This document shows positions 13,555 to 56,466 of a DNA stretch of 64,000 nucleotides, in pieces (within the stretch, counting starts at the first letter, position 1; every line of letters begins with the position of its first letter). A program made the position numbers and the translations under genes. Origin of the DNA: Macrostomum lignano (taxonomy: Eukaryota); NCBI GenBank assembly GCA_002269645.1, contig NIVC01000350.1:310001-374000 (forward strand). Reading direction: 5' to 3'. The notes below the pieces were generated by a model that worked only from the letters and a program-made list of their open reading frames with translations, did no database searches and was not told the DNA's origin.

Positions 13555-15465
13555 GGATTGCTAATCTAGTCTACATCATGGATACAGGAATAGAATGGAT
13601 TGCTAATCTAGCCTACATCATGGATACAGGAATAGAATGGATTGCTAATCTAGCCTACATCATGGATGCAGGGATAGAATGGATTGCTAATCTAGCCTAC
13701 ATCATGGATGCAGGAACAGAATGGATTGCTAATCTAGCCTACATCATGGATACAGGAATAGAATGGATTGCTAATCTAGCCTACATCATGGATACAGGAA
13801 TAGAATGGATTGCTAATCTAGTCTACATCATGGATGCAGGGATAGAATGGATTGCTAATCTAGCCTACATCATGAATACAGGAATAGAATGGATTGCTAA
13901 TCTAGCCTACATCATGGATGCAGGGATAGAATGGATTGCTAATCTAGCCTACATCATGGATGCAGGAACAGAATGGATTGCTAATCTAGCCTACATCATG
14001 GATACAGGAATAGAATGGATTGCTAATCTAGCCTACATCATGGATACAGGAATAGAATGGATTGCTAATCTAGCCTACATCGTGGATGCAGGAATAGAAT
14101 GGATTGCTAATCTAGCCTACATCATGGATGAAGGAGTAGAATGGATTGCTAATCTAGCCTACATCATGGATGAAGGAATAGAATGGATTGCTAATCTAGC
14201 CTACATCATGGATGAAGGAGTAGAATGGATTGCTAATCTAGCCTACATCATGGATGCAGGAATAGAATGGATTGCTAATCTAGCCTACATCGTGGATGCA
14301 GGAATAGAATGGATTGCTAATCTAGCCTACATCATGGATGAAGGAGTAGAATGGATTGCTAATATAGCCTACATCATGGATGAAGGAATAGAATGGATTG
14401 CTAATCTAGCCTACATCATGGATGAAGGAGTAGAATGGATTGCTAATCTAGCCTACATCATGGATGAAGGAATAGAATGGATTGCTAATCTAGCCTACAT
14501 CATGGATGAAGGAATAGAATGGATTGCTAATCTAGCCTACATCATAGATGAAGGAATAGAATGGATTGCTAATCTAGCCTACATCATAGATGAAGGAATA
14601 GAATGGATTGCTAATCTAGCCTACATCATGGATGAAGGAATAGAATGGATTGCTAATCTAGCCTACATCATAGATGAAGGAATATATTGGATTGCTAATC
14701 TAGCCTACATCATAGATGAAGGAATAGAATGGATTGCTAATCTAGCCTACATCATGGATGCAGGGATAGAATGGATTGCTAATCTAGCCTACATCATAGA
14801 TGAAGGAATAGAATGGATTGCTAATCTAGCCTACATCATGGATGCAGAAATAGAATGGATTGCTAATCTAGCCTACATCATAGATGAAGGAATAGAATGG
14901 ATTGCTAATCTAGCCTACATCATGGATGCAGGGATAGAATGGATTGCTAATCTAGCCTACATCATGGATGCAGGGATAGAATGGATTGCTAATCTAGCCT
15001 ACATCATAGATGCAGGAATAGAATGGATTGCTAATCTAGCCTACATCATGGATGCAGGAATAGAATGGATTGCTAATCTAGCCTACATCATGGATGCAGG
15101 AATAGGAGGGATTGCTAATCTAGCCTACATCATAGATGCAGGGATAGAATGAATTGCTAATCTAGCCTACATCATGGATGCAGGAATAGAATGGATTGCT
15201 AATCTAGCCTACATCATGGATGTATAAATAGAAAGGATTGCTAATCTAGCCTACATCATGGATGAAGGAATAGAATGGATTGCTAATCTAGCCTACATCA
15301 TGGATGCAGGAATAGAATGGATTGCTAATCTAGCCTACATAATGGATGCAGGAATAGAATGGATTGCTAATCTAGCCTACATCATGGATGCAGGAATAGA
15401 ATGGATTGCTAATCTAGCCTGCATCATGGATGAAGGAATAGAATGGATTGCTAATCTAGTCTACA
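13555..15465 (-). repeat. 42-bp tandem satellite array B, related to array A and inverted relative to it
   Basis: Reverse-complement unit GATTAGCAATCCATTCTATTCCTGCATCCATGATGTAGGCTA, about 45 copies. Confidence 0.97.
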
Positions 15466-31369: not shown

Positions 31370-32797
31370 TCACTGGCAGACTTCGTTCCACCGCTGGGCG
31401 CCCACGAACTCCAGGCCGGGCACCGGCGCCTGCGGCTCCGCGTGGAAAATCGCCGGAAAATGGAAGCCTCCGGGCGGCGGGCACGGCACCTGAGCGCCGC
31501 CGCCGCCGCTGCCGTAGCCACCAATGCCGTTGGAAATGCCGCCTCCACCGCTGCCACCGCCGCGAGATGCAGCGGCTGCGGCCGCGGCCACCGCCGCAGC
31601 GTGCAAGGCGTAGGGGCTCATCAGGCAGTCGGCCGGGGCGGCTGGACCGCCGAACATCGCTGGCGGCATGGCGGCGTGCGGCATCGGATAGGCGAAGCCG
31701 CCTCCGCCGCCGAGCTGCTGCTGCTGCTGCTGCTGTTGCTGCTGATGATGCAGATGATGCTGCAGTGGGTGCGGGTGGCCGTAGTACGCGGCAGCCGGGT
31801 AGTACACTGGCGGCTGCTGCGGCGGAGGTGCCTGCTGGTGGTGGCTCACCTGCTGCGACGGCTGCGGCTGCGGCGGCTGCGGCTGCTGAGACGTCCCGCC
31901 GTTCAAATTCGCTGCGGCCGCAGCGGCGGCGGCGGCGGCTGCGGCGGCGGACTGGCCAGCGGCGGCCAGTTTGATGGCGGCAGCGGCGCCTGGCGAGAAC
32001 GGCGAGCCGGTGAACTTCTGCTGCTCCTGCTTGGCCTTCACCTTGGACATCTCCTCCTTGCTGAGCGCCTTCTTCACGTCGGCCCGCGAGGAACCGATGC
32101 TGTGCGGCTTGTACAGGATGCACTTGTCCACGGGGTCGTAGTCGTCGAATGTGACAAAGCCGAAGCCGCGACTCTCGCCAGTTTCCTTCCAGGTCATGAC
32201 CTCGGCCTCTTCCACGTTGCCGAACTGGCCAAAGTAGTCGCGCAGGTCTTCCGAGGTCACATCCTTCTTCAGCGCGCCAACGAAGAGCTTCTTGACGGTC
32301 ATGTGCGCCTCCGGCTTGTCAGAATCTTCGCGCGGCATCGCCCGCTTCGTCTCCACCTGCTTGCCGCCCAGCACATGCGGCCTGGCAGCCTGCGCGGCGT
32401 CCACCATCTCGGGCTCGCGGTAGGTGACAAAGCCGAACCCGCGCGACCGGCCAGTCTTGTTGTCCTTCATCACCACGACGTCCGTGATTTCGCCGAAGTC
32501 GGCGAAGAATTCGTTCAGCTGGTCGTCGCTGACGAAAGGCGCCAGGCCGCCGACGAAGAGCTTACGAAGCTGCTCGGATCGGCGACGCTCTTCGTCCACC
32601 TGCTGGAAGCAGACCGTGGCGCTGCCGGCGCTGCCGCTGGTGCCACCGACGGCCCCGGACGCGCCGCCTCCGCCGCTTCCGCTTCCGCTGCCGCCCCCGC
32701 CGCCGGCTGCACCGCTGCCGCTGTGACTGTCGCTTGAATCGCCGCGAATCTGGCTGATGTCGCTTAACGATGAAGTCGACGCTGGACTGGCGGTCAT
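31370..32797 (-). CDS. hnRNP A1/A2-family RNA-binding protein with two RRMs, single coding exon, 475 aa
   Basis: RNP2 KLFVGGL and KLFVGAL; RNP1 RGFGFVTY and RGFGFVTF; linker VETKRAMPREDS...AHMTVKK characteristic of hnRNP A1/Hrb98DE; low-complexity Q/P/H/A/G tail. Confidence 0.92.
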   Translation of the reverse strand: MTASPASTSSLSDISQIRGDSSDSHSGSGAAGGGGGSGSGSGGGGASGAVGGTSGSAGSATVCFQQVDEERRRSEQLRKLFVGGLAPFVSDDQLNEFFADFGEITDVVVMKDNKTGRSRGFGFVTYREPEMVDAAQAARPHVLGGKQVETKRAMPREDSDKPEAHMTVKKLFVGALKKDVTSEDLRDYFGQFGNVEEAEVMTWKETGESRGFGFVTFDDYDPVDKCILYKPHSIGSSRADVKKALSKEEMSKVKAKQEQQKFTGSPFSPGAAAAIKLAAAGQSAAAAAAAAAAAAANLNGGTSQQPQPPQPQPSQQVSHHQQAPPPQQPPVYYPAAAYYGHPHPLQHHLHHQQQQQQQQQQLGGGGGFAYPMPHAAMPPAMFGGPAAPADCLMSPYALHAAAVAAAAAAASRGGGSGGGGISNGIGGYGSGGGGAQVPCPPPGGFHFPAIFHAEPQAPVPGLEFVGAQRWNEVCQ

Positions 32798-47829: not shown

Positions 47830-47893
47830 AGATAATCAGCCAACCAGTCAGTCAATCAATCAGTCAATAAACCAGTTAATCAATCAATCAGTT

Positions 47894-47968
<75 letters not shown>

Positions 47969-48320
47969 CAATCAATCAATCAATAAACCAGTTAATCAAT
48001 CAATCAATCAATCAATCAAACAATCAATCAATCAATCGATTAATAAATGAACCAATCAATCAACAAATCAATCAGTCAATCGATCAGTCCATCAATAAAT
48101 AAATAAATAAATAAATCAATTAATCAATCAATCAATCAATAAATAAATAAATAAATCAATCAATCAATTAATCAATCAATCAATTAATTAATCAATCAAT
48201 CAGTTAATCAGTCAATCAACCAATCAATCAATTAATTGATCAATAAATCAGTCAATCAATCAATCAATCAATCAATCGATCAATCAATCGAGGAATCAAT
48301 ACTTAAATCAATTTATCAAT
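47830..48320. repeat. (ATCA)n microsatellite abutting the TIR gene stop codon
   Basis: Directly visible. Confidence 0.93.
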
Positions 48321-51300
48321 CAAAGCCGCTCCAACGCTTCCACAAAGTCGTACAGCTGGTGGAAGAGCGTCAGCCGCAGGCTCTTTTCCAGCAGCCTGTA
48401 AAACGCCTCAGGCGCTTGACTCTTCATCTTGAGCAGGAAGAGCAGATGCCGGCCCTCCAGCTTGAAGGGCTCGAGGTGGCTGGGCAGCTTGTTCTCCAGC
48501 AGCCAGTTCAACACCTCCTCGCTGGTCCACTTCGTGTAGGCGGGTTCCGGCGGCGGCCGCGGCTTCGGCGGAGTCGCCGTCTGCACCGGCTGAGTCACAG
48601 GCGCAATGGACTCATCCGGAGACTTGAGCACACTCTGCTTCAGGTAGCCCACTAGTTTAGCAAAGCTCTCTTCCTTGTTGCGACTGAAGTTGTAATAGAG
48701 CTGAGTGCCCATGATGAAGCCTAGCCAGCCGTCAGGCTTGTACTTGTGCTCCAGCAGCAGCGGCACCAGCTGCTTCCGCCGCCTCACCGCGTACTCGGCC
48801 TCTGCGAGATTTACCGTTTTAAATGGGGGGGGGGTGATTATGATAAGATGCCACAAAAAAATATTAAAACCTTATAAAATAGTTTTTCTTCTTTAAATTT
48901 TTTTCAATAATCATAAAAAATCAGACATCATCCGCCCCCCCCCCAGACTAAGGCATCATCCCCCCCCAGAATCAGGCATCATTCCGTCCCCCCCCCAGAA
49001 TCAGGCATCATCCGCCCCCCCGGAATCAGGCATCATCCGCCCCCCCAGAATCAGGCATCATCCCCCCCAGAATCAGGCATCATTCCGCCCCCCCCAGACT
49101 AAGGCATCATCCCCCCCAGAATCAGGCATCATTCCGTCCCCCCCCCAGAATCAGGCATCATCCGCCCCCCGGAATCAGGCATCATCCGCCCCCCCAGAAT
49201 CAGGCATCATCCCCCCCCCAGAATCAGGCATCATTCCGTCCCCCCCCCAGAATCAGGCATCATCCGCCCCCCCCCCGGAATCAGGCATCATCCGCCCCCC
49301 AGAATCAAGCATCATTCGCCCCCCCAGAATTGGCATCATCCGCCCCCCAGAATCAGGCATCATCCGCCCCCCCCCCAGAATCAGGCATCATCCGCCCCCC
49401 CCAGAATTTGGCATCATCCGCCCCCCAGAATCAAGCATCATCCGCCCCCCCAGAATCAAGCATCATCCGCCCCCCAGAATTGGCATCATCCGCCCCCAGC
49501 GTCCCCAGAATCAGACATCATCCGCCCCCCAGAATCAGGCATCATCCGCCCCCCAGAATCAGACATCATCCGCCCCCTCAGAATCAGGCATCATCCGCCC
49601 TAGAATCAGGCATCATCCGCCCCCCAGAATCAGGCATCATCCGCCCCCAGAATCAGGCATCATCCGCCCCCAGAATCAGACATCATCCCCCCCCAGAATC
49701 AGGCATCATCATCAGGCATCATCCGCCCCAGAATCAGGCATCATCCGCCCCCAGAATCAGAATCAGCCCCAAACTGCGCACCCATGCGGCAGAAGTCGCT
49801 CTCCTTGTAGCCCTTGCAGACGCACATGAGCACAGCTGCCGAGCCTTCGACAGCCTTGGCCATGCAATCTAGCGTGGAGTCCTGCATCTGCTCGAAGTCG
49901 ACCCATACCTGTTAAATAATATAAAAAAATAGACTGGATTACTGGGGGGTAAGATAGGAAGGCTAGTCTTGTTCTAAAAATACATTAAAACGCTTCAATT
50001 TATGACTTTCTACTGAACTGATCAAGTAGCTTCTTACACGCAAATTAGCTGAGTGGCCTAGCAAGTTAGCTATTATAGTATCTATATTGACACCTGAAGT
50101 TTTCGTGTCAGTATATAGACTGTGCTTATATAAAAAATCGAACTAACAAATATAATTATTAGTGGAAGAGCCCCGGCTAGGGGCTGAGACGCTATAATTA
50201 TTAGTTATAATCTTATCATAATAAATAATAATCAGTATATAGACTGTGCTCAAAAACAAGCCCAAGACAGGCTCTACACAGAAGTCTTCTGTAGTCATTA
50301 GCAACCCGGATTTCCAAGGAGAACAAGCAATAAAACTCGCCTTGAAATTTTGCTCCTTCAACTGAGGACAGATCCAGCGAACAAACTCGCCGCTGCTGTG
50401 CTGATGATAGCTGATCATCACGTGACCTGCGGTTTCGCCGGCTGAACCCGGCGCCTGCGGCTGGGCAACTGCGGCTGCGCTTGCACCAGTGGGTTGTGGT
50501 GGTGGCGGTTTTGCCGCTGACGATCCGGTCGGGGGCGGCGCTGAGGGCGGCGGCGGCGGCGCCGGTGGCAGATCAGTTGACTGGCCCAGCTGGAGATTCT
50601 GCTTGACTGACCGTTGCCTTGGCAACGGCACATCGCGGAGATCGCCTCGCTCGTCTGTGCACAAGCGCAAGTTAATTAGGCTGGATTGGTGAATTCTCTT
50701 ATTAAGCACTGAAAACTATCTACTATTGATGCATTAGTATAGAAAGTAAGTAGTATAAAAGTAAGTAGTATAAATCTTCTGTCAAGAGATTTGTTACCAG
50801 CTCGAGAATTAAAGAGTTGATATCGAATCACCTGCTAAAGGTATTTAGCCACCTGATAAAGGTATTTAGCCACCTGATAAAGGTATTTAGACACCTGCTA
50901 AAGATATTTAGACACCTGCTAAAGATATTTAGACACCTGCTAAAGGTATTTAGACACCTGCTAAAGATATTTAGACACCTGCTAAAGGTATTTAGACACC
51001 TTCTAAAAGTATTTAGACACCTGCTAAAGATATTTAGACACCTTTTAAAAGTATTTAGACACCTGCTAAAGATATTTAGACACCTGCTAAAGGTATTTAG
51101 ACACCTGCTAAAGATATTTAGACACCTGCTAAAGGTATTTAGACACCCACTAAAGGTATTTAGACACCTGCTTAAGGTATTTAGACACCTGCTTAAGGTA
51201 TGTAGCCACCTGTCAAAGGTATTTCTAATACACCTGCTAATTGAATATAGTTATCTGAATGCTGTTAAAGCTAAGCTTCTCATTTGCTGAAAGGAATCGG

Positions 51301-51762
51301 AAATAAAATTTGCCATGGCAATCAAAACCCTCACTGTCATCGTCGGGAATGAAGGGCCCATCCGTGGTGTACACCTCCTCCGTATTGTATTGAATCGCCT
51401 CCAAGTCCCTGTTGGATTTCCACTGCGGATTGGAGCGCAGACTCCGCAGCTCCGGGCCGCAGATTTCTTTGATATTCGACGAGCAGGCCGAGTTGAAAGA
51501 CATCGACAAGATGATCTTCAGCGCCATGGAGACCTCGTCGCTGCGCTCGGGCGGCGACTGCAGCATGTCGGACAGCACAGGCAGAATTTTACACTCGAGC
51601 AGGATGTCCTTGTTGTCCTCGTTCTTTGTGAACTGGTAAGCGCCTGGCTTAGAGGTTTTTTGTAGTTTGCTATGATGTTATTTATTTGATCTTTTTTACT
51701 ACTAATAGTAGCTTGATGCAAAATTGCGATTAATAAAAAATGAGATTGAAAGAGAGAGAGAG

Positions 51763-51832
<70 letters not shown>

Positions 51833-52027
51833 ATGAGTTGAGATCTAGTGAGAGAGAGTGAGAGAGAATGAGTTGAGACCTAGTGAGAGAGAGTGAAAGA
51901 GAATGAGTTGAGACCTAGTGAGAGAGAGTGAGAGAGAATGAGTTGAGATATAGAAAGAGAGCGGGAGAAAGAGAGAGAGAGAAAAAAAGAGAGAGACCTA
52001 GAGAGAGAGAGATTTAGAGAGAGAGAA

Positions 52028-52074
<47 letters not shown>

Positions 52075-53182
52075 GAGAGAGAGAGAGAGAGAGAGAGGAA
52101 AGAGAGAGAGAGAGAGAGAGAGAGCTTGTGAGCGAGTGAAAGTAAGATGAAAGGAGATCGAATGAGACGGGCTAAGATGAAGTAAGATGAAGTGAGATGA
52201 AGGAGTGAGATTGATTGAGATAAAGTGAGATGTAGTGAGATCAGGCAGCTGAACTCGGACCAAACCAGCACTCACACTTGGCCAGCTCGATCACGTGATA
52301 GCCGTTAGACCGCCTGGAAGAGTGCCGATGCGCGGAGCTGAGGTTTTCGACTAAGAAGGTCACCAGCGATTTCTCGTTAATGAGCAGCCGGCTGGCTTCC
52401 TCCTCGTTGCAGCTGAAGACCAGCACCAGGTAGGCGGAGAAGCGGAATCGATCACTGCCGGATTTCAAATACGGCTGGGCGGTGTCAACAAAGTGATAGT
52501 CGACCAGGTTGAAGAAGATCTCGCTGTTGCCCTTGAACAACATGTTGTACACCACGCTGAGACTCTGCCTCAGTCGTTTATTGACTAGGTCGGGCAGCTT
52601 ATCGGCCAGGTGATCATCCGCCCAGTCTCTCTGCATCTCTGAGCACAGTTTGAGCACCCACTGATTCTTCGACAGGGCCAGGGCGAACTGCTCACTCTGG
52701 TCCGAGTAGTTCTGGCACAGAGTCATCACGTAGGACATCAGGTTGAGCGGCTCCTTCTTGATGGCGCCGTCCGGGTGAGTGAAGTGGGTCTTCCGCTCTG
52801 CCTCGAAGGCCTCGTAGGCCAGCTGGCAGAGCCTCTCCATCAGGCCGTCGGCTTCGACCACGGCGACCGCCTTCTGCTCGCGCAGTTCAACAATTTCCGC
52901 CTCGCTTAGGCGCGAAGATTTGATGTAATAGTTCTGCGTGAGCTTCAGCACCTGGTTGCGGAACTTCGCTGTCTCCGTTTCGCCGTCAACCAGGTACTGC
53001 TGGACTTTGCTGATGGAGTCCAGGTTCCGGTTGAGGGTGTTCCGCTTCAGCGACTCCAGACTGGCCTGTGGGTCCGCCTCCGCATCGGCATCCGCCTTCG
53101 ACGTCTGCTCCGGCCTGAGCACTTCCTCGGCCTCGGAGTCCGACATGATGCCGTCCGTGGTGGTGGTGCGAGCGTGGTTCAT
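48320..53182 (-). CDS. ARM-like / TIR (TIR_2 type) / SAM-like domain protein, 5 coding exons, about 712 aa
   Basis: Exons 52276-53182, 51335-51643, 50341-50654, 49782-49908 and 48320-48801 give one open frame (one GC-AG intron). TIR: HVMISYHQ...KVWVDFEQMQDSTLDCMAKAVEGSAAVLMCVCKGYKESDFCRM-E-AEYA...LVPLLLE...PDGWLGFIMG. SAM-like: KWTSEEVLNWL. The N-terminal helical region has ARM-like segments (VVYNM, KNEDNKDILL). Confidence 0.88.
48925..49765. repeat. About 24-bp minisatellite (CAGAATCAGGCATCATCCGCCCCC) in TIR gene intron 4
   Basis: About 33 units with variable poly-C. Confidence 0.93.
50825..51240. repeat. 21-bp minisatellite (TAAAGGTATTTAGACACCTGC) in TIR gene intron 2
   Basis: About 19 units. 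Confidence 0.93.
51750..52250. repeat. (GA)n-rich microsatellite in TIR gene intron 1
   Basis: Directly visible. Confidence 0.92.
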
Positions 53183-53288
53183 GGCTGCGGATGGGGGATT
53201 TAGGTGGGTTTGACTGCACGTGAGGAAGTGAAACTTCAATTCTTCGACAATATTGGGTGGCCAGTTTAGCGCAAAAAATAAACTACGG

Positions 53289-53565
53289 CAGGGGTGGCCA
53301 ACTCCGGCCCGCAAAGCCTCTCTATCCGGCCCTCGGGTCCTCTGAAACTTTACAATAGCATCCAGCCCACTCAGGGTTTGCCTCTTCTGAGTTCCCTCTC
53401 CACTCTTCTCTCTTTTCTCTCCTCTCTCTTCTCCTCTCTCCTCTCCACTCTCTATTTCTCTCTCCACTCTCCGCTTCTCTCCTCTCTCCTCTTATCTCAT
53501 CTCATCTCCTCTATCCTCTCCTCTCCTCTCTTCATTTTTCTCTCCTCTCCTCTCTCCTCTCATCT
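53289..53565 (+). mobile_element. hAT (Charlie-like) element terminus followed by a (CT)-rich tract
   Basis: CAGGGGTGGCCAACTCCGGCCCGCAAAGCCTCTCTATCCGGCCCTCGGGTCC...; matches 45890-45990 on the other strand. Confidence 0.7.
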
Positions 53566-53889
53566 TCAGCAGGTCATCAAATTGGATCAGGGACTGCAGC
53601 AGGTGAAAATAAAAGATAATTTAAGTTTTAAAATGTATATGAACCCTAAGGGTATGTTATTAAATCGAACAGGATCGTATAAAATGACTAAAATTCTAGC
53701 AACATGGCCAACATAAAGAAAAAATAAATATAAAAAATATGAAACTGACCTGCTATATTTATATTTTTATGTCGGGAATTTTCGAAACTTCAACATATCT
53801 GATAAAATACTACTCTTAGCATAAAACATGCCCAAAATGAAATGTATTTTCAACACAACACAACACTGTACAGTTGCAATATCTGATTG

Positions 53890-55557: not shown

Positions 55558-56466
55558 TCAAGCCCGAGATCCCTCCAGACAGGAGCGCACGCAGCCGCAG
55601 CAGCAGGCGTAGCGCAAGCAGGCGGCGCAGCCGTCATTAGAATTCCTGGCCTTCAGATAGGCGCAGTAGATGAGGCGGCTGATGCAGCTGCCCAACAGGT
55701 AGCCGGGCCGGCTGGATCTGGCCAGGTAGGCCGACAGCAGGTGGCGCAGCTCGTTAGGCCCGAACGGATCGAAGTGTCCGGGACAGACCAGCCGGACTCG
55801 AACTCCAGCAAACGCCGGCAGCTGCGCCGGTACTGCGCCACGCTGCTGCCAGGTAGAATGTCTCTGTCCGACAAGTACACCGTGGCTGAACAGGAGTCCG
55901 CTGCGCTCGAGCGCCACGCTGCCCGTGGCCCGGACAGTGCAGCACTCGGACGCAGCGGCCGCCGCCGAGGTCAAATGTGTGACCGTCCTGCAGTTGCAGC
56001 TTGGGCTGGGCTGGCCGCAGCTGGTAGGGCGGCACAGCTCGCTGCGCGGCACGAAGGTCACGCAGACGTACTGATCACCGGCTGTGAGAGCGGCGGCCTC
56101 GTTGGCGTGGATGGCGGTCAGGGGGAACTGGTGCAGGCCGCCGGCGTGGTCAAAGTGCGCGTGAGTAGCCACAGCGGTCAGCGGCCTGTCGGGCGTCTGA
56201 GGCGCCAAGCCAGCCGAGCGAAGGTAGGCGGGCAGGTCCCACAGACCCAGGCCGGTGTCCACCAGCAGGTCGGAGTCGGGGCCGCGGATCAGCCAGATGT
56301 TTGCCCGATTGCTGGACACAAACTGGCGCTCCCGGATCTGATAGACGCCCGGGTGCACCTCCGAGTGGAGAAAATCGTCCTCACAGTTTCGGTCACTGAT
56401 GGCCGGACTCGCCGGCGCCGGGGTCGGCGGCGAGGTTGGCACACGTTGCTGAAGTGTGTCAGGCAT
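55558..56466 (-). CDS. MBLAC2: Metallo-beta-lactamase domain protein 2 (acyl-CoA thioesterase) with internal frameshifts; may be a pseudogene or an assembly error
   Basis: NRANIWLIRG, LVDTGLG, AVATHAHFDHAGG (HxHxDH) and VCPGHFDPFG match recalled MBLAC2 motifs. LQDGHTFDLGGGRCVRVLHCPGH and VYLSDRDILPGSSVAQY lie in other frames. Confidence 0.85.
   Translation of the reverse strand: MPDTLQQRVPTSPPTPAPASPAISDRNCEDDFLHSEVHPGVYQIRERQFVSSNRANIWLIRGPDSDLLVDTGLGLWDLPAYLRSAGLAPQTPDRPLTAVATHAHFDHAGGLHQFPLTAIHANEAAALTAGDQYVCVTFVPRSELCRPTSCGQPSPSCNCRTVTHLTSAAAAASECCTVRATGSVALERSGLLFSHGVLVGQRHSTWQQRGAVPAQLPAFAGVRVRLVCPGHFDPFGPNELRHLLSAYLARSSRPGYLLGSCISRLIYCAYLKARNSNDGCAACLRYACCCGCVRSCLEGSRA

What the first reader, a model, noticed from the sequence alone, without database searches (positions are those of the whole stretch)
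48320..53182. Intact ARM-TIR-SAM protein with the TIR catalytic glutamate: candidate NAD+-cleaving immune or degeneration effector in a non-SARM1 domain order
Seen: five exons splice into an uninterrupted frame of about 712 aa. It has a helical ARM-like N-terminus, a Pro-rich linker, a complete TIR domain and a C-terminal SAM-like domain. The TIR alphaC motif reads CRM-E-AEYA, with the Glu codon split by the last intron. Established: this Glu is catalytic in SARM1, plant TIRs and bacterial Thoeris TIRs, and SARM1 is ordered ARM-SAM-SAM-TIR. Inference: this is a sensor (ARM), enzyme (TIR), oligomeriser (SAM) protein with shuffled order. Similar TIR_2 proteins are expanded in invertebrates but are largely uncharacterised biochemically.
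Basis: partly seen in the sequence, partly recalled or inferred. Interest (0 to 1): 0.75.

Follow-up and report, generated by a model that had tools for sequence, protein, structure and literature searches.

The report
Flatworm ARM-TIR-SAM gene, conserved family member
This is an intact five-exon gene of the flatworm Macrostomum lignano encoding an armadillo-repeat, TIR and SAM domain protein that keeps the glutamate TIR enzymes need to cleave NAD+, but it belongs to a large, already catalogued animal family whose function is still unproven.

Summary
Five minus-strand exons (53182-48320) splice into a 712-aa open frame, and intron 4 splits the codon of Glu553.

- **Domains:** Pfam gives a full-length TIR_2 match (E=1.8e-20). 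A 66-member family profile shows the N-terminus is a true armadillo-repeat domain (Vac8 E=1e-34). The C-terminus matches only SAM domains. An alignment-based AlphaFold model (pLDDT 83.6) shows three folded domains joined by disordered linkers.
- **Catalytic residue:** Glu553 aligns to the catalytic Glu of human SARM1 (E642), plant L6 and ROQ1, and several animal TIRs shown to be active. It is kept in 65 of 66 family members.
- **Not unusual:** The window is Macrostomum lignano. A 99%-identical duplicate locus is already annotated from RNA-seq as a hypothetical protein. The same ARM-TIR-SAM order occurs in molluscs, annelids, brachiopods, echinoderms, hemichordates, amphioxus, tunicates and lungfish.
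- **Prior tests:** A 2026 preprint catalogued this TIR cluster. It tested four isolated TIRs from it in E. coli and scored none of them active, while neighbouring clusters were active.

The SARM1-like NADase switch therefore remains a plausible but unproven reading. It is a new member of a known kind, of moderate interest.

The parts
52276..53182 (-). Exon 1 (ATG at 53182-53180; residues 1-302 plus the first base of codon 303): N-terminal tail and most of the ARM-repeat domain
   Evidence: The AF2 model is helical-repeat from about residue 26.
51335..51643 (-). Exon 2 (residues 303-405): last ARM repeats and the start of the disordered linker
   Evidence: The weak single-sequence Pfam Arm hit lies at residues 310-336. 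The family motif ..LAxNDxNK..GxLPxL.. lies here.
50341..50654 (-). Exon 3 (residues 406-510): Pro/Ala-rich disordered linker and the first third of the TIR domain (GHVMISY...NFK). It ends at a GC donor.
   Evidence: The GC donor is also present in duplicate locus L001.
49782..49908 (-). Exon 4 (residues 511-552 plus the first base of the Glu553 codon): TIR beta-B, BB loop, alpha-B, beta-C and the start of alpha-C (VWVD...CRM)
48320..48801 (-). Exon 5 (last two bases of the Glu553 codon to stop TGA 48322-48320): rest of the TIR domain, second Pro-rich linker, and the C-terminal SAM domain
51369..53107 (-). ARM-repeat domain, residues about 26-394 (spans intron 1)
   Evidence: - Family profile against PDB: Vac8 1.3e-34, beta-catenin 3e-19, ODAD2/ARMC4 3.5e-26.
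- Pfam Arm hits in 39 of 66 members.
- AF2 pLDDT above 90.
- Foldseek matches designed ARM proteins at about 5e-7.
48611..50439 (-). TIR domain, residues about 478-616 (spans introns 3 and 4)
   Evidence: - Pfam TIR_2 1.8e-20, full length.
- Profile hits to the TIRs of RPS4, Cat1 and TIR-1/SARM1.
- The AF2 model has alternating strands and helices.
48800..49782 (-). Glu553 codon, G (49782) + AG (48801-48800), interrupted by the 980-nt phase-1 intron 4 (49781-48802)
   Evidence: - Aligns to hSARM1 E642, L6 E135, ROQ1 E86 and the catalytic Glu of active animal TIRs.
- Glu is present in 65 of 66 family members.
- The intron sits at the same position in amphioxus, limpet and a Macrostomum paralogue.
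48323..48559 (-). SAM domain, residues about 634-712
   Evidence: - Family profile A3 hits only SAM domains in PDB: TEL/ETV6 fusions 4e-9, liprin-beta 4.3e-7, Shank2 1.8e-4, SMS1 3.7e-4, SARM1 SAM 6.6e-3.
- SAM_1/2/3 Pfam hits in about 20 of 66 members.
- AF2 gives a five-helix bundle with pLDDT above 90.

Best explanation
**What it is.** This is an intact gene of the free-living flatworm Macrostomum lignano, and very probably an expressed one. It is one of two near-identical duplicate loci. It encodes a cytosolic 712-aa protein with an armadillo-repeat domain, a disordered Pro-rich linker, a TIR_2 domain and a C-terminal SAM domain. It belongs to a conserved bilaterian ARM-TIR-SAM family that is separate from SARM1.

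**Most likely mechanism (inferred, not shown).** The TIR domain is a latent NAD+-cleaving enzyme, a glycohydrolase or ADP-ribosyl cyclase that uses Glu553. It becomes active only when TIR domains are brought together. The C-terminal SAM domain would supply the self-association. The ARM domain would act as the ligand- or partner-binding regulatory module, possibly autoinhibitory. The output would be a (c)ADPR-type signal or local NAD+ loss in an immune, stress or cell-death pathway. That logic is analogous to SARM1 but was assembled independently.

**Confidence.** The identification of the gene and its family is near certain. The stated confidence of 0.45 refers to the enzymatic mechanism.
For: **Shown.**
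- The open frame is intact and the splice sites are canonical.
- The exon junctions are identical to an RNA-seq-derived GenBank model of the 99%-identical duplicate.
- Exons are 99.7% identical between the duplicates, against 92-98% in the flanks.
- TIR_2 matches at 1.8e-20.
- ARM and SAM are established by family profiles and by an AF2 model with pLDDT 83.6 and pTM 0.76.
- The order ARM then TIR then SAM holds in 66 of 66 full-length homologues.
- Glu553 lies in the column of hSARM1 E642, L6 E135, ROQ1 E86 and five experimentally active animal TIRs.
- Glu is kept in 65 of 66 members, within a near-invariant motif S-x-N-C-R-x-E-A-E-Y.
- No signal peptide or transmembrane helix is evident in the model.

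**Context.**
- Most non-TLR animal TIRs keep this Glu, and 12 of 61 tested made cADPR in a Glu-dependent way (preprint 10.64898/2026.04.20.719644).
- The nearest active relatives are 32-34% identical to this TIR. They are the oyster A0A8W8J0Z4 (cADPR), the Latimeria H2ZXV5 (NAD+ depletion) and a Clupea TIR (cADPR). They share the (N/S/Y)-C-x-x-E motif and lack the Trp of WxxxE.
- The closest SAM matches include polymer-forming SAMs such as TEL and Shank.
Against: - No biochemical or expression data exist for this protein.
- Four isolated TIR domains from the same TIR cluster gave no cADPR isomer and no NAD+ depletion in E. coli (Table S4 rows 149-152). They came from Branchiostoma (50% identical to this TIR), Lepisosteus, Phallusia and Chlamydomonas. 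That assay also missed the known enzymes RUN1 and RPP1, and the constructs lacked the SAM domain.
- This protein has Phe549 where SARM1 and plant TIRs have the Trp of WxxxE. It has Asp520 where 57 of 66 family members have the BB-loop Gly, the position aligned to hSARM1 G601.
- The whole TIR is highly conserved, so conservation of the Glu alone does not separate catalysis from a conserved binding surface.
- The roles assigned to ARM and SAM rest on analogy only.
Confidence: 0.45

Rival explanations
1. The protein is a non-enzymatic scaffold or adaptor. The TIR domain serves only for TIR-TIR assembly with other TIR proteins such as a MyD88-like protein. The ARM domain recruits partners, and the SAM domain builds a signalling platform. 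The Glu is kept for structural or binding reasons.
For: - Four isolated TIRs of the same cluster were inactive in E. coli.
- Invertebrate ARM-TIR proteins are usually discussed in the literature as candidate adaptors (PMC9334734; PMC6321704).
- The classic WxxxE Trp and the BB-loop Gly are absent in this protein.
- The entire TIR surface is strongly conserved.
Against: - Flatworms are reported to lack canonical TLRs and IL-1R (PMC7958881; PMC7075850), so the usual upstream partner is missing.
- Adaptor and receptor TIRs generally lose the Glu, whereas this family keeps it in 65 of 66 members.
- Active animal TIRs share the same N/S-C-x-x-E motif without the Trp.
- The E. coli screen gives false negatives for known enzymes.
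Confidence: 0.33
2. The TIR is an enzyme, but not an NAD+ depleter. It would make a specific small-molecule signal (a cADPR isomer or another ADPR-derived nucleotide), or it would act on nucleic acids as some plant TIRs do. A dedicated downstream receptor would read the product.
For: - Most active animal TIRs in the 2026 screen produced cADPR without depleting NAD+.
- The TIR is closer in sequence to those TIR_2 domains than to SARM1.
Against: - No product is known for any member of this cluster.
- No candidate receptor was identified. The neighbouring genes (a metallo-beta-lactamase-fold protein and a Na/Ca exchanger) give no operon-like clue in a eukaryote.
Confidence: 0.15
3. The locus is a decaying or non-functional duplicate produced by the recent chromosome duplication in M. 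lignano.
For: - The window is one of two collinear copies.
- The DV1 line carries large duplications (PMC5730564).
- Three of the six substitutions between the copies are non-synonymous, and there is one in-frame codon indel.
Against: - There is no stop, frameshift or broken splice site in 2139 nt.
- Exons are far more conserved than flanks.
- Two of the three replacements and the indel fall in the disordered linker.
Confidence: 0.04

Closest known systems
Conserved metazoan ARM-TIR(-SAM) proteins. These are TIR cluster 'A0A0B7AZE4_1' of preprint 10.64898/2026.04.20.719644 and the 'ARM-TIR' class of mollusc immunome surveys (PMC9334734). Examples are Lottia XP_009045941, Branchiostoma XP_019613750, Lingula XP_013385107, Protopterus XP_043933463, and the M. 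lignano paralogues A0A1I8GCB8 and A0A1I8H3D3.
   Same: - Same three domains in the same order, and similar length (about 600-750 aa).
- TIR 42-55% identical.
- Same S-x-N-C-R-x-E-A-E-Y motif.
- Same phase-1 intron inside the Glu codon.
   Different: - This protein has a longer Pro-rich linker.
- Its ARM domain is more divergent, so single-sequence Pfam Arm is sub-threshold.
- It has Phe549 instead of Asn/Ser and Asp520 instead of the BB-loop Gly.
SARM1 / dSarm / C. elegans TIR-1
   Same: - It contains ARM, SAM and TIR domains and is cytosolic.
- The catalytic Glu sits at the equivalent alpha-C position.
- Foldseek finds full-length hSARM1 (7anw, E=1.3e-6), but at the level of individual domains.
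   Different: - The order is ARM-TIR-SAM with one SAM, not ARM-SAM-SAM-TIR.
- The TIR belongs to a different cluster: 24% identity, 21.5 bits against 120-216 bits for its own relatives.
- It has no WxxxE Trp.
- The global TM-score is only 0.26, with rmsd 28 A.
- The ARM and SAM domains are not specifically SARM1-like.
Experimentally active animal TIR_2 domains: Magallana gigas A0A8W8J0Z4 (cADPR), Latimeria H2ZXV5 (NAD+ depletion), Clupea A0A6P8EVF3 (cADPR)
   Same: - They share the TIR_2 signature HxMxSY...VWxD...C-x-x-E...P..GWL.
- They are 32-34% identical to this TIR.
- The Glu is aligned, and there is no Trp at position -4.
   Different: - They fall in different 40% clusters.
- The Latimeria and Clupea proteins are short (236-296 aa) and lack ARM and SAM.
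- Activity is shown for them and not for this cluster.
Plant TIR-only / TNL TIR domains and prokaryotic Thoeris or CRISPR-associated TIRs (RPS4, L6, ROQ1, Cat1)
   Same: The TIR fold and the catalytic Glu column match. The best PDB sequence hits are RPS4 (1.9e-5) and Cat1 (9e-5).
   Different: Identity is below 23%. Partner domains differ (NB-LRR, CARF and others), and these TIRs carry the WxxxE Trp.

Membership tests
Metazoan ARM-TIR-SAM family (TIR cluster A0A0B7AZE4_1) | N-terminal armadillo-repeat domain | tested here: met
   - The family profile hits Vac8 at 1.3e-34 and beta-catenin at 3e-19.
- This protein aligns over residues about 60-400.
- AF2 gives a helical repeat with pLDDT above 90, and Foldseek matches designed ARM proteins.
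- Single-sequence Pfam Arm is only 0.019.
Metazoan ARM-TIR-SAM family (TIR cluster A0A0B7AZE4_1) | Central TIR_2 domain at least 40% identical to cluster members, with the motif S-x-N-C-R-x-E-A-E-Y | tested here: met
   TIR_2 matches at 1.8e-20. Identity is 50% to the B. lanceolatum TIR and 54% to M. lignano P0007. The motif here reads SDFCRMEAEY.
Metazoan ARM-TIR-SAM family (TIR cluster A0A0B7AZE4_1) | C-terminal SAM domain after the TIR | tested here: met
   Profile A3 hits only SAM domains. 110 of 154 top homologues match this C-terminal segment by BLASTP. AF2 gives a helical bundle at 634-712.
Metazoan ARM-TIR-SAM family (TIR cluster A0A0B7AZE4_1) | Shared gene structure: a phase-1 intron in the catalytic Glu codon | tested here: met
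   The split G|GT...AG|A(G/A) is identical in the window, L001, L004 (M. lignano paralogue), L003 (Lottia) and L002 (Branchiostoma).
SARM1 / TIR-1 orthologues | Domain order ARM - SAM - SAM - TIR | tested here: not met
   The order here is ARM - TIR - SAM with a single SAM.
SARM1 / TIR-1 orthologues | TIR belongs to the SARM1 clade | tested here: not met
   hSARM1 scores 21.5 bits on the family TIR HMM, against 120-216 bits for TIR_2 relatives, with 24% identity. The preprint places SARM1 in a different cluster, T1J6E6_2.
SARM1 / TIR-1 orthologues | Allosteric NMN/NAD+ pocket in the ARM domain and an octameric SAM ring | not testable with these tools
   The ARM domain shows no specific sequence homology to the SARM1 ARM. 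The oligomeric state needs experiment or multimer modelling.
Catalytic (NAD+-cleaving) TIR domains | Glutamate on helix alpha-C at the catalytic position | tested here: met
   Glu553 is aligned to hSARM1 E642, L6 E135, ROQ1 E86 and the active animal TIRs.
Catalytic (NAD+-cleaving) TIR domains | Trp four residues before the Glu (WxxxE) | tested here: not met
   This protein has Phe549, and the family has Asn or Ser. The active Latimeria, Clupea, Adineta and oyster TIRs also lack the Trp, so it is not strictly required.
Catalytic (NAD+-cleaving) TIR domains | Glu-dependent NAD+ turnover or cADPR-isomer production | not testable with these tools
   There is no assay for this protein. Four cluster relatives were negative as isolated TIRs in E. 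coli.
TLR / IL-1R receptors and MyD88-type adaptors | LRR or Ig ectodomain with a transmembrane segment, or a death domain, next to the TIR | tested here: not met
   Pfam finds only TIR_2, Arm and SAM. The AF2 model has no transmembrane helix and no death fold.

The most novel reading that the evidence does not exclude
The ARM-TIR-SAM family may be an ancient NAD+-cleaving switch that arose independently of SARM1. Its TIR would be silent as a monomer, which would explain the negative screens of isolated TIRs. It would fire only when the C-terminal SAM domain polymerises after the ARM domain senses a ligand. The TIR cluster also includes green-algal and picozoan proteins, so the module would predate animals. 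It would survive in spiralians, ambulacrarians, amphioxus, tunicates and basal fishes, and none of the 30 named family members is a tetrapod, which could reflect loss there.
Probability: 0.2. Interest if true: 0.7.

Novelty: new member of a known kind. Interest (0 to 1): 0.35.

Why it matters
If the family proves to be a SAM-gated NADase, animals would have a second regulated TIR enzyme architecture, built independently of SARM1. It would be present in chordates as far as lungfish and gar. It would also explain why screens of isolated TIR domains miss activity.

M. lignano has working transgenesis and RNAi, so the family could be studied in vivo in an animal that lacks canonical Toll-like receptors. 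As it stands, though, this locus adds one more member to an already catalogued, uncharacterised family and brings no new principle.

Tried and rejected
- **Word-indexed protein searches.** Searches with the full protein and with the 66-sequence family alignment were swamped by low-complexity Pro-rich words. They returned only 1-2 hits. The exhaustive HMMER search was needed instead.
- **Single-sequence AlphaFold** gave pLDDT 41 and was discarded. The usable model came from alignment A2. It was built on the 99%-identical paralogue P0001, because the spliced window protein was not accepted as input.
- **Gerdol et al. 2017**, which defines the 'ecTIR-DC' families, is not held. I could not establish which ecTIR-DC number, if any, corresponds to ARM-TIR-SAM. 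The only ecTIR-DC family described in held papers with ARM repeats (family 6: ARM-Death-TIR-TIR) is a different architecture.
- **'Shuffled SARM1' was rejected.** None of the three domains is specifically closest to its SARM1 counterpart.
- **Pseudogene or chance ORF was rejected**.
- **ORFs on the + strand** inside the locus (49330-49872 and 50817-51290) lie entirely in tandem repeats and were dismissed.
- **Rfam and tRNA scans** of the window found nothing.
- **Not possible here.** I could not inspect the inter-domain contacts or PAE of the model, so ARM-TIR autoinhibitory docking is untested. Whether M. lignano also has a canonical SARM1 could not be determined, because the preprint table is truncated.

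Full report
**1. The observation.**
The feature lies on the minus strand. Translating all frames of 48250-53260 gave five open segments that join at consensus splice sites.
- The exons are 53182-52276, 51643-51335, 50654-50341, 49908-49782 and 48801-48320. Together they give a 2139-nt CDS of 712 codons plus TGA, with no internal stop.
- Introns 1, 2 and 4 are GT-AG. Intron 3 has a GC donor (AAG|GCGAGT).
- ATG 53182 is the first in-frame ATG after an upstream stop.
- The motif CRM-E-AEYA is present, and intron 4 splits the Glu553 codon as G|AG.

**2. Organism and evidence that the model is real.**
A protein search returned one near-identical hit: 99% identity over 709 aa to 'hypothetical protein BOX15_Mlig009876g2, partial [Macrostomum lignano]'.
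- That protein is encoded on contig NIVC01001008.1 of assembly GCA_002269645.1.
- The window is collinear with that locus from about 40056 to 60579. Flanks and introns are 92-98% identical and the exons are 99.7% identical: six substitutions and one in-frame codon indel.
- The window is therefore the second copy of a recently duplicated region. This fits the 180 Mb of duplicated blocks at 95% identity or more that were reported for this genome (PMC5730564).
- The same paper states that the GenBank annotation was derived from a genome-guided RNA-seq transcriptome.
- The exon coordinates I derived independently from the window, transferred to the duplicate, reproduce the deposited protein exactly, including the GC-AG intron. 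This is indirect transcript support for every junction. It does not say which copy is expressed.

**3. Domains.**
On the single sequence, Pfam gives a full-length TIR_2 match (E=1.8e-20, residues 484-603, profile 1-122/122). It gives only sub-threshold Arm (0.019) and SAM_1 (0.05) hits.

An exhaustive HMMER search of 1.84 billion representatives found 3728 relatives, 178 of them at E<=1e-30. Most of the best hits are 550-750 aa long and match both the N-terminal region and a contiguous TIR-plus-C-terminus stretch.
- By BLASTP of the three regions separately, 75 of the 154 sequences on hand (the best hits plus the few found earlier) match all three. In the 66 of these that are of typical full length (520-800 aa), the order is always N-domain, then TIR, then C-domain.
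- I aligned these 66 sequences as alignment A2.
- Scanning every member against Pfam gives TIR_2 in 66 of 66, Arm in 39 of 66, ARM_ARMC5 in 39 of 66, and SAM_1/2/3 in about 20 of 66.
- The A2 profile against PDB sequences hits armadillo proteins very strongly: Vac8 1.3e-34, ODAD2/ARMC4 3.5e-26, beta-catenin 3e-19.
- A profile of the C-terminal 78 residues (A3) hits only SAM domains: TEL/ETV6 fusions 4e-9, liprin-beta 4.3e-7, Shank2 1.8e-4, SMS1 3.7e-4, SARM1 SAM 6.6e-3.

AlphaFold2 on the single sequence failed (pLDDT 41). With A2 as the alignment it gave pLDDT 83.6 and pTM 0.76.
- Three domains are confident: a helical repeat at 24-391, an alpha/beta domain at 475-613 and a helical bundle at 631-709, in paralogue numbering.
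- The linkers 392-474 and 614-630 are disordered.
- Foldseek against the PDB returns designed armadillo proteins (about 5e-7). It also returns full-length human SARM1 (7anw, 1.3e-6), but with TM 0.26 and rmsd 28 A. This means shared domain types rather than a shared arrangement.

**4. The catalytic glutamate.**
- phmmer and profile alignments to plant RPS4 and to the CRISPR-associated Cat1 TIR place Glu553 on the Glu of their C-x-x-E-L motif.
- I built an HMM of the family TIR and aligned TIR sequences printed in Table S4 of preprint 10.64898/2026.04.20.719644.
- The residue in the Glu553 column is exactly the tabulated catalytic residue of human SARM1 (E642), flax L6 (E135) and ROQ1 (E86). 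The same holds for five animal TIRs scored active there: oyster E439, Latimeria E74, Clupea E74, Adineta E440 and B. lanceolatum E183.
- Within the family, the Glu is present in 65 of 66 sequences, with one Gln. It sits in a near-invariant S-x-N-C-R-x-E-A-E-Y block.

Two departures are worth recording.
- The position four residues upstream, which is Trp in SARM1 and plant TIRs, is Asn or Ser in the family and Phe549 here.
- The BB-loop Gly, present in 57 of 66 members and aligned to hSARM1 G601, is Asp520 here.

The active Latimeria, Clupea, Adineta and oyster TIRs also lack the Trp, and the oyster TIR also lacks the Gly. Neither departure therefore excludes catalysis.

**5. Distribution and what was already known.**
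Named members of the family come from the following taxa:
- M. lignano paralogues;
- gastropods (Lottia, Haliotis, Gigantopelta, Batillaria, Bulinus, Littorina);
- bivalves (Pecten, Argopecten, Mytilus, Mercenaria, Dreissena);
- the brachiopod Lingula;
- annelids (Owenia, Dimorphilus);
- the crinoid Antedon;
- the hemichordate Ptychodera;
- amphioxus;
- the tunicate Phallusia;
- the lungfish Protopterus.

All are 'uncharacterized'. One UniRef entry carries an automatic 'ADP-ribosyl cyclase' name.

Mollusc immunome surveys list 'ARM-TIR' proteins as a class of unknown function (PMC9334734).

The 2026 preprint clusters the M. lignano paralogues A0A1I8GCB8 and A0A1I8H3D3 with Lingula, Mizuhopecten, Arion, Branchiostoma, Lepisosteus and Phallusia. 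The green algae Chlamydomonas, Gonium and Ostreococcus fall in the same cluster. This is one 40%-identity TIR cluster (representative A0A0B7AZE4_1). All members are scored 'GLU' at the catalytic position and carry an N-terminal TPR-clan repeat region.

Four isolated TIR domains from that cluster were expressed in E. coli (rows 149-152). None was scored active for cADPR, 2'cADPR, 3'cADPR or NAD+ depletion.
- In the same table, related clusters are active: rows 145, 146 and 153.
- The known enzymes RUN1 and RPP1 are also blank, so the assay has false negatives.
- SARM1 sits in a different cluster.

**6. Gene-structure conservation.**
The phase-1 intron inside the catalytic Glu codon is at the identical position in five genes: the window gene, its duplicate, an M. 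lignano paralogue, the Lottia gene and the Branchiostoma gene (G|GT...AG|AG, or |AA in Lottia). The intron position is thus shared by spiralians and a chordate. This confirms common descent of these genes.

**7. Mechanism.**
What is shown:
- The gene is intact and belongs to a conserved family.
- Its annotated duplicate has an RNA-seq-derived model with the same junctions. Which copy is transcribed was not tested.
- The three domains are ARM, TIR and SAM.
- The catalytic-position Glu is conserved.

What is inferred:
- By analogy with SARM1, plant and bacterial TIR enzymes, TIR catalysis needs TIR-TIR assembly. This rests on established knowledge rather than a test here.
- A C-terminal SAM domain is a plausible assembly module.
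- An ARM domain is a plausible ligand- or partner-binding and autoinhibitory module.

This would also explain why isolated TIRs of the cluster were silent. I rate the enzyme reading at about 0.45, a non-catalytic scaffold at about 0.33, a signal-only enzyme variant at about 0.15, and a dead duplicate at about 0.04.

The adaptor reading is weakened by the reported absence of TLR and IL-1R in flatworms and by retention of the Glu. It is strengthened by the negative screen.

**8. Comparison and novelty.**
The protein works, at best, like SARM1, but it is not a member of that family. The domain order, the TIR clade, and the ARM and SAM affinities all fail the membership test. It is a clear member of the ARM-TIR-SAM family.

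The specific locus is a duplicate of an already annotated hypothetical gene. The family has been catalogued and partly screened. I therefore file it as a new member of a known kind, with moderate interest. It is a good experimental candidate in a tractable flatworm, but it is not a surprise.

**9. Surroundings.**
- The introns and the 3' flank consist largely of tandem repeats, which is typical of this genome.
- The neighbours are a metallo-beta-lactamase-fold ORF (55558-56466, minus strand) upstream and, by synteny with L001, a Na/Ca-exchanger gene downstream.
- No RNA family or tRNA was found in the window.

Noticed in passing
window 48800-49782; L001 14027-15013; L002 9384-9802; L003 3237-3512; L004 2995-3646: The phase-1 intron that splits the catalytic Glu codon sits at exactly the same position in five genes: the flatworm gene, its duplicate, a flatworm paralogue, the limpet Lottia and the amphioxus Branchiostoma. 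It is an ancient intron position inside the active-site codon.
   Followed up: yes
window 50339-50340 (donor of intron 3): Intron 3 uses a non-canonical GC donor (AAG|GCGAGT). The same GC-AG intron is in the duplicate locus and is used by the transcript-based annotation.
   Followed up: yes
window 47848-48323, 48939-49710, 50829-51224, 51751-52124, 53392-53567: Every intron and both flanks are dominated by tandem repeats. These are (TCAA)x119 overlapping the stop codon, a 24-bp unit x31 in intron 4, a 21-bp unit x19 in intron 2, (AG)n in intron 1, and CT-rich repeats upstream of the ATG. Intron lengths differ between the two duplicate loci mainly through repeat copy number (680 vs 890 nt and 432 vs 857 nt).
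   Followed up: partly
window 40056-60579 vs L001 (NIVC01001008.1:137859-163350): The window is a collinear duplicate of another M. lignano contig. Flanks are 92-98% identical and exons 99.7% identical. This is consistent with the recent large-scale duplication described for the DV1 line.
   Followed up: partly
window 55558-56466 (-): A single-exon 302-aa ORF with a metallo-beta-lactamase-fold domain (Pfam Lactamase_B, 3.6e-10) lies about 2.4 kb upstream of the TIR gene. It is conserved at the same place in the duplicate locus, where the precomputed hits also list a faint Anti-Pycsar_Apyc1 match.
   Followed up: no
window 31370-32797 (-): A 475-aa ORF with two RNA-recognition motifs (RRM_1, 1.6e-34), probably a single large exon of an RNA-binding protein gene.
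   Followed up: no
window 13578-15152 (+): A 524-aa ORF gives odd, repeat-driven Pfam matches (SepF, EGF_MSP1_1), none of which forms a significant individual stretch. It is probably translated low-complexity or repeat sequence rather than a gene.
   Followed up: no
window 49879-49881 (Asp520) and 49794-49792 (Phe549): This protein departs from its own family at two sites near the active site. It has Asp in place of the BB-loop Gly (57 of 66 members) and Phe in place of Asn/Ser four residues before the Glu. The duplicate copy also has Asn instead of Asp at residue 548.
   Followed up: partly
related proteins, not in the window (preprint Table S2; P0012): The same 40%-identity TIR cluster contains green-algal proteins (Chlamydomonas, Gonium, Ostreococcus) with an N-terminal repeat region. 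A 1925-aa Picozoa protein has a 46-49% identical TIR. This suggests either a pre-metazoan origin or horizontal transfer.
   Followed up: no
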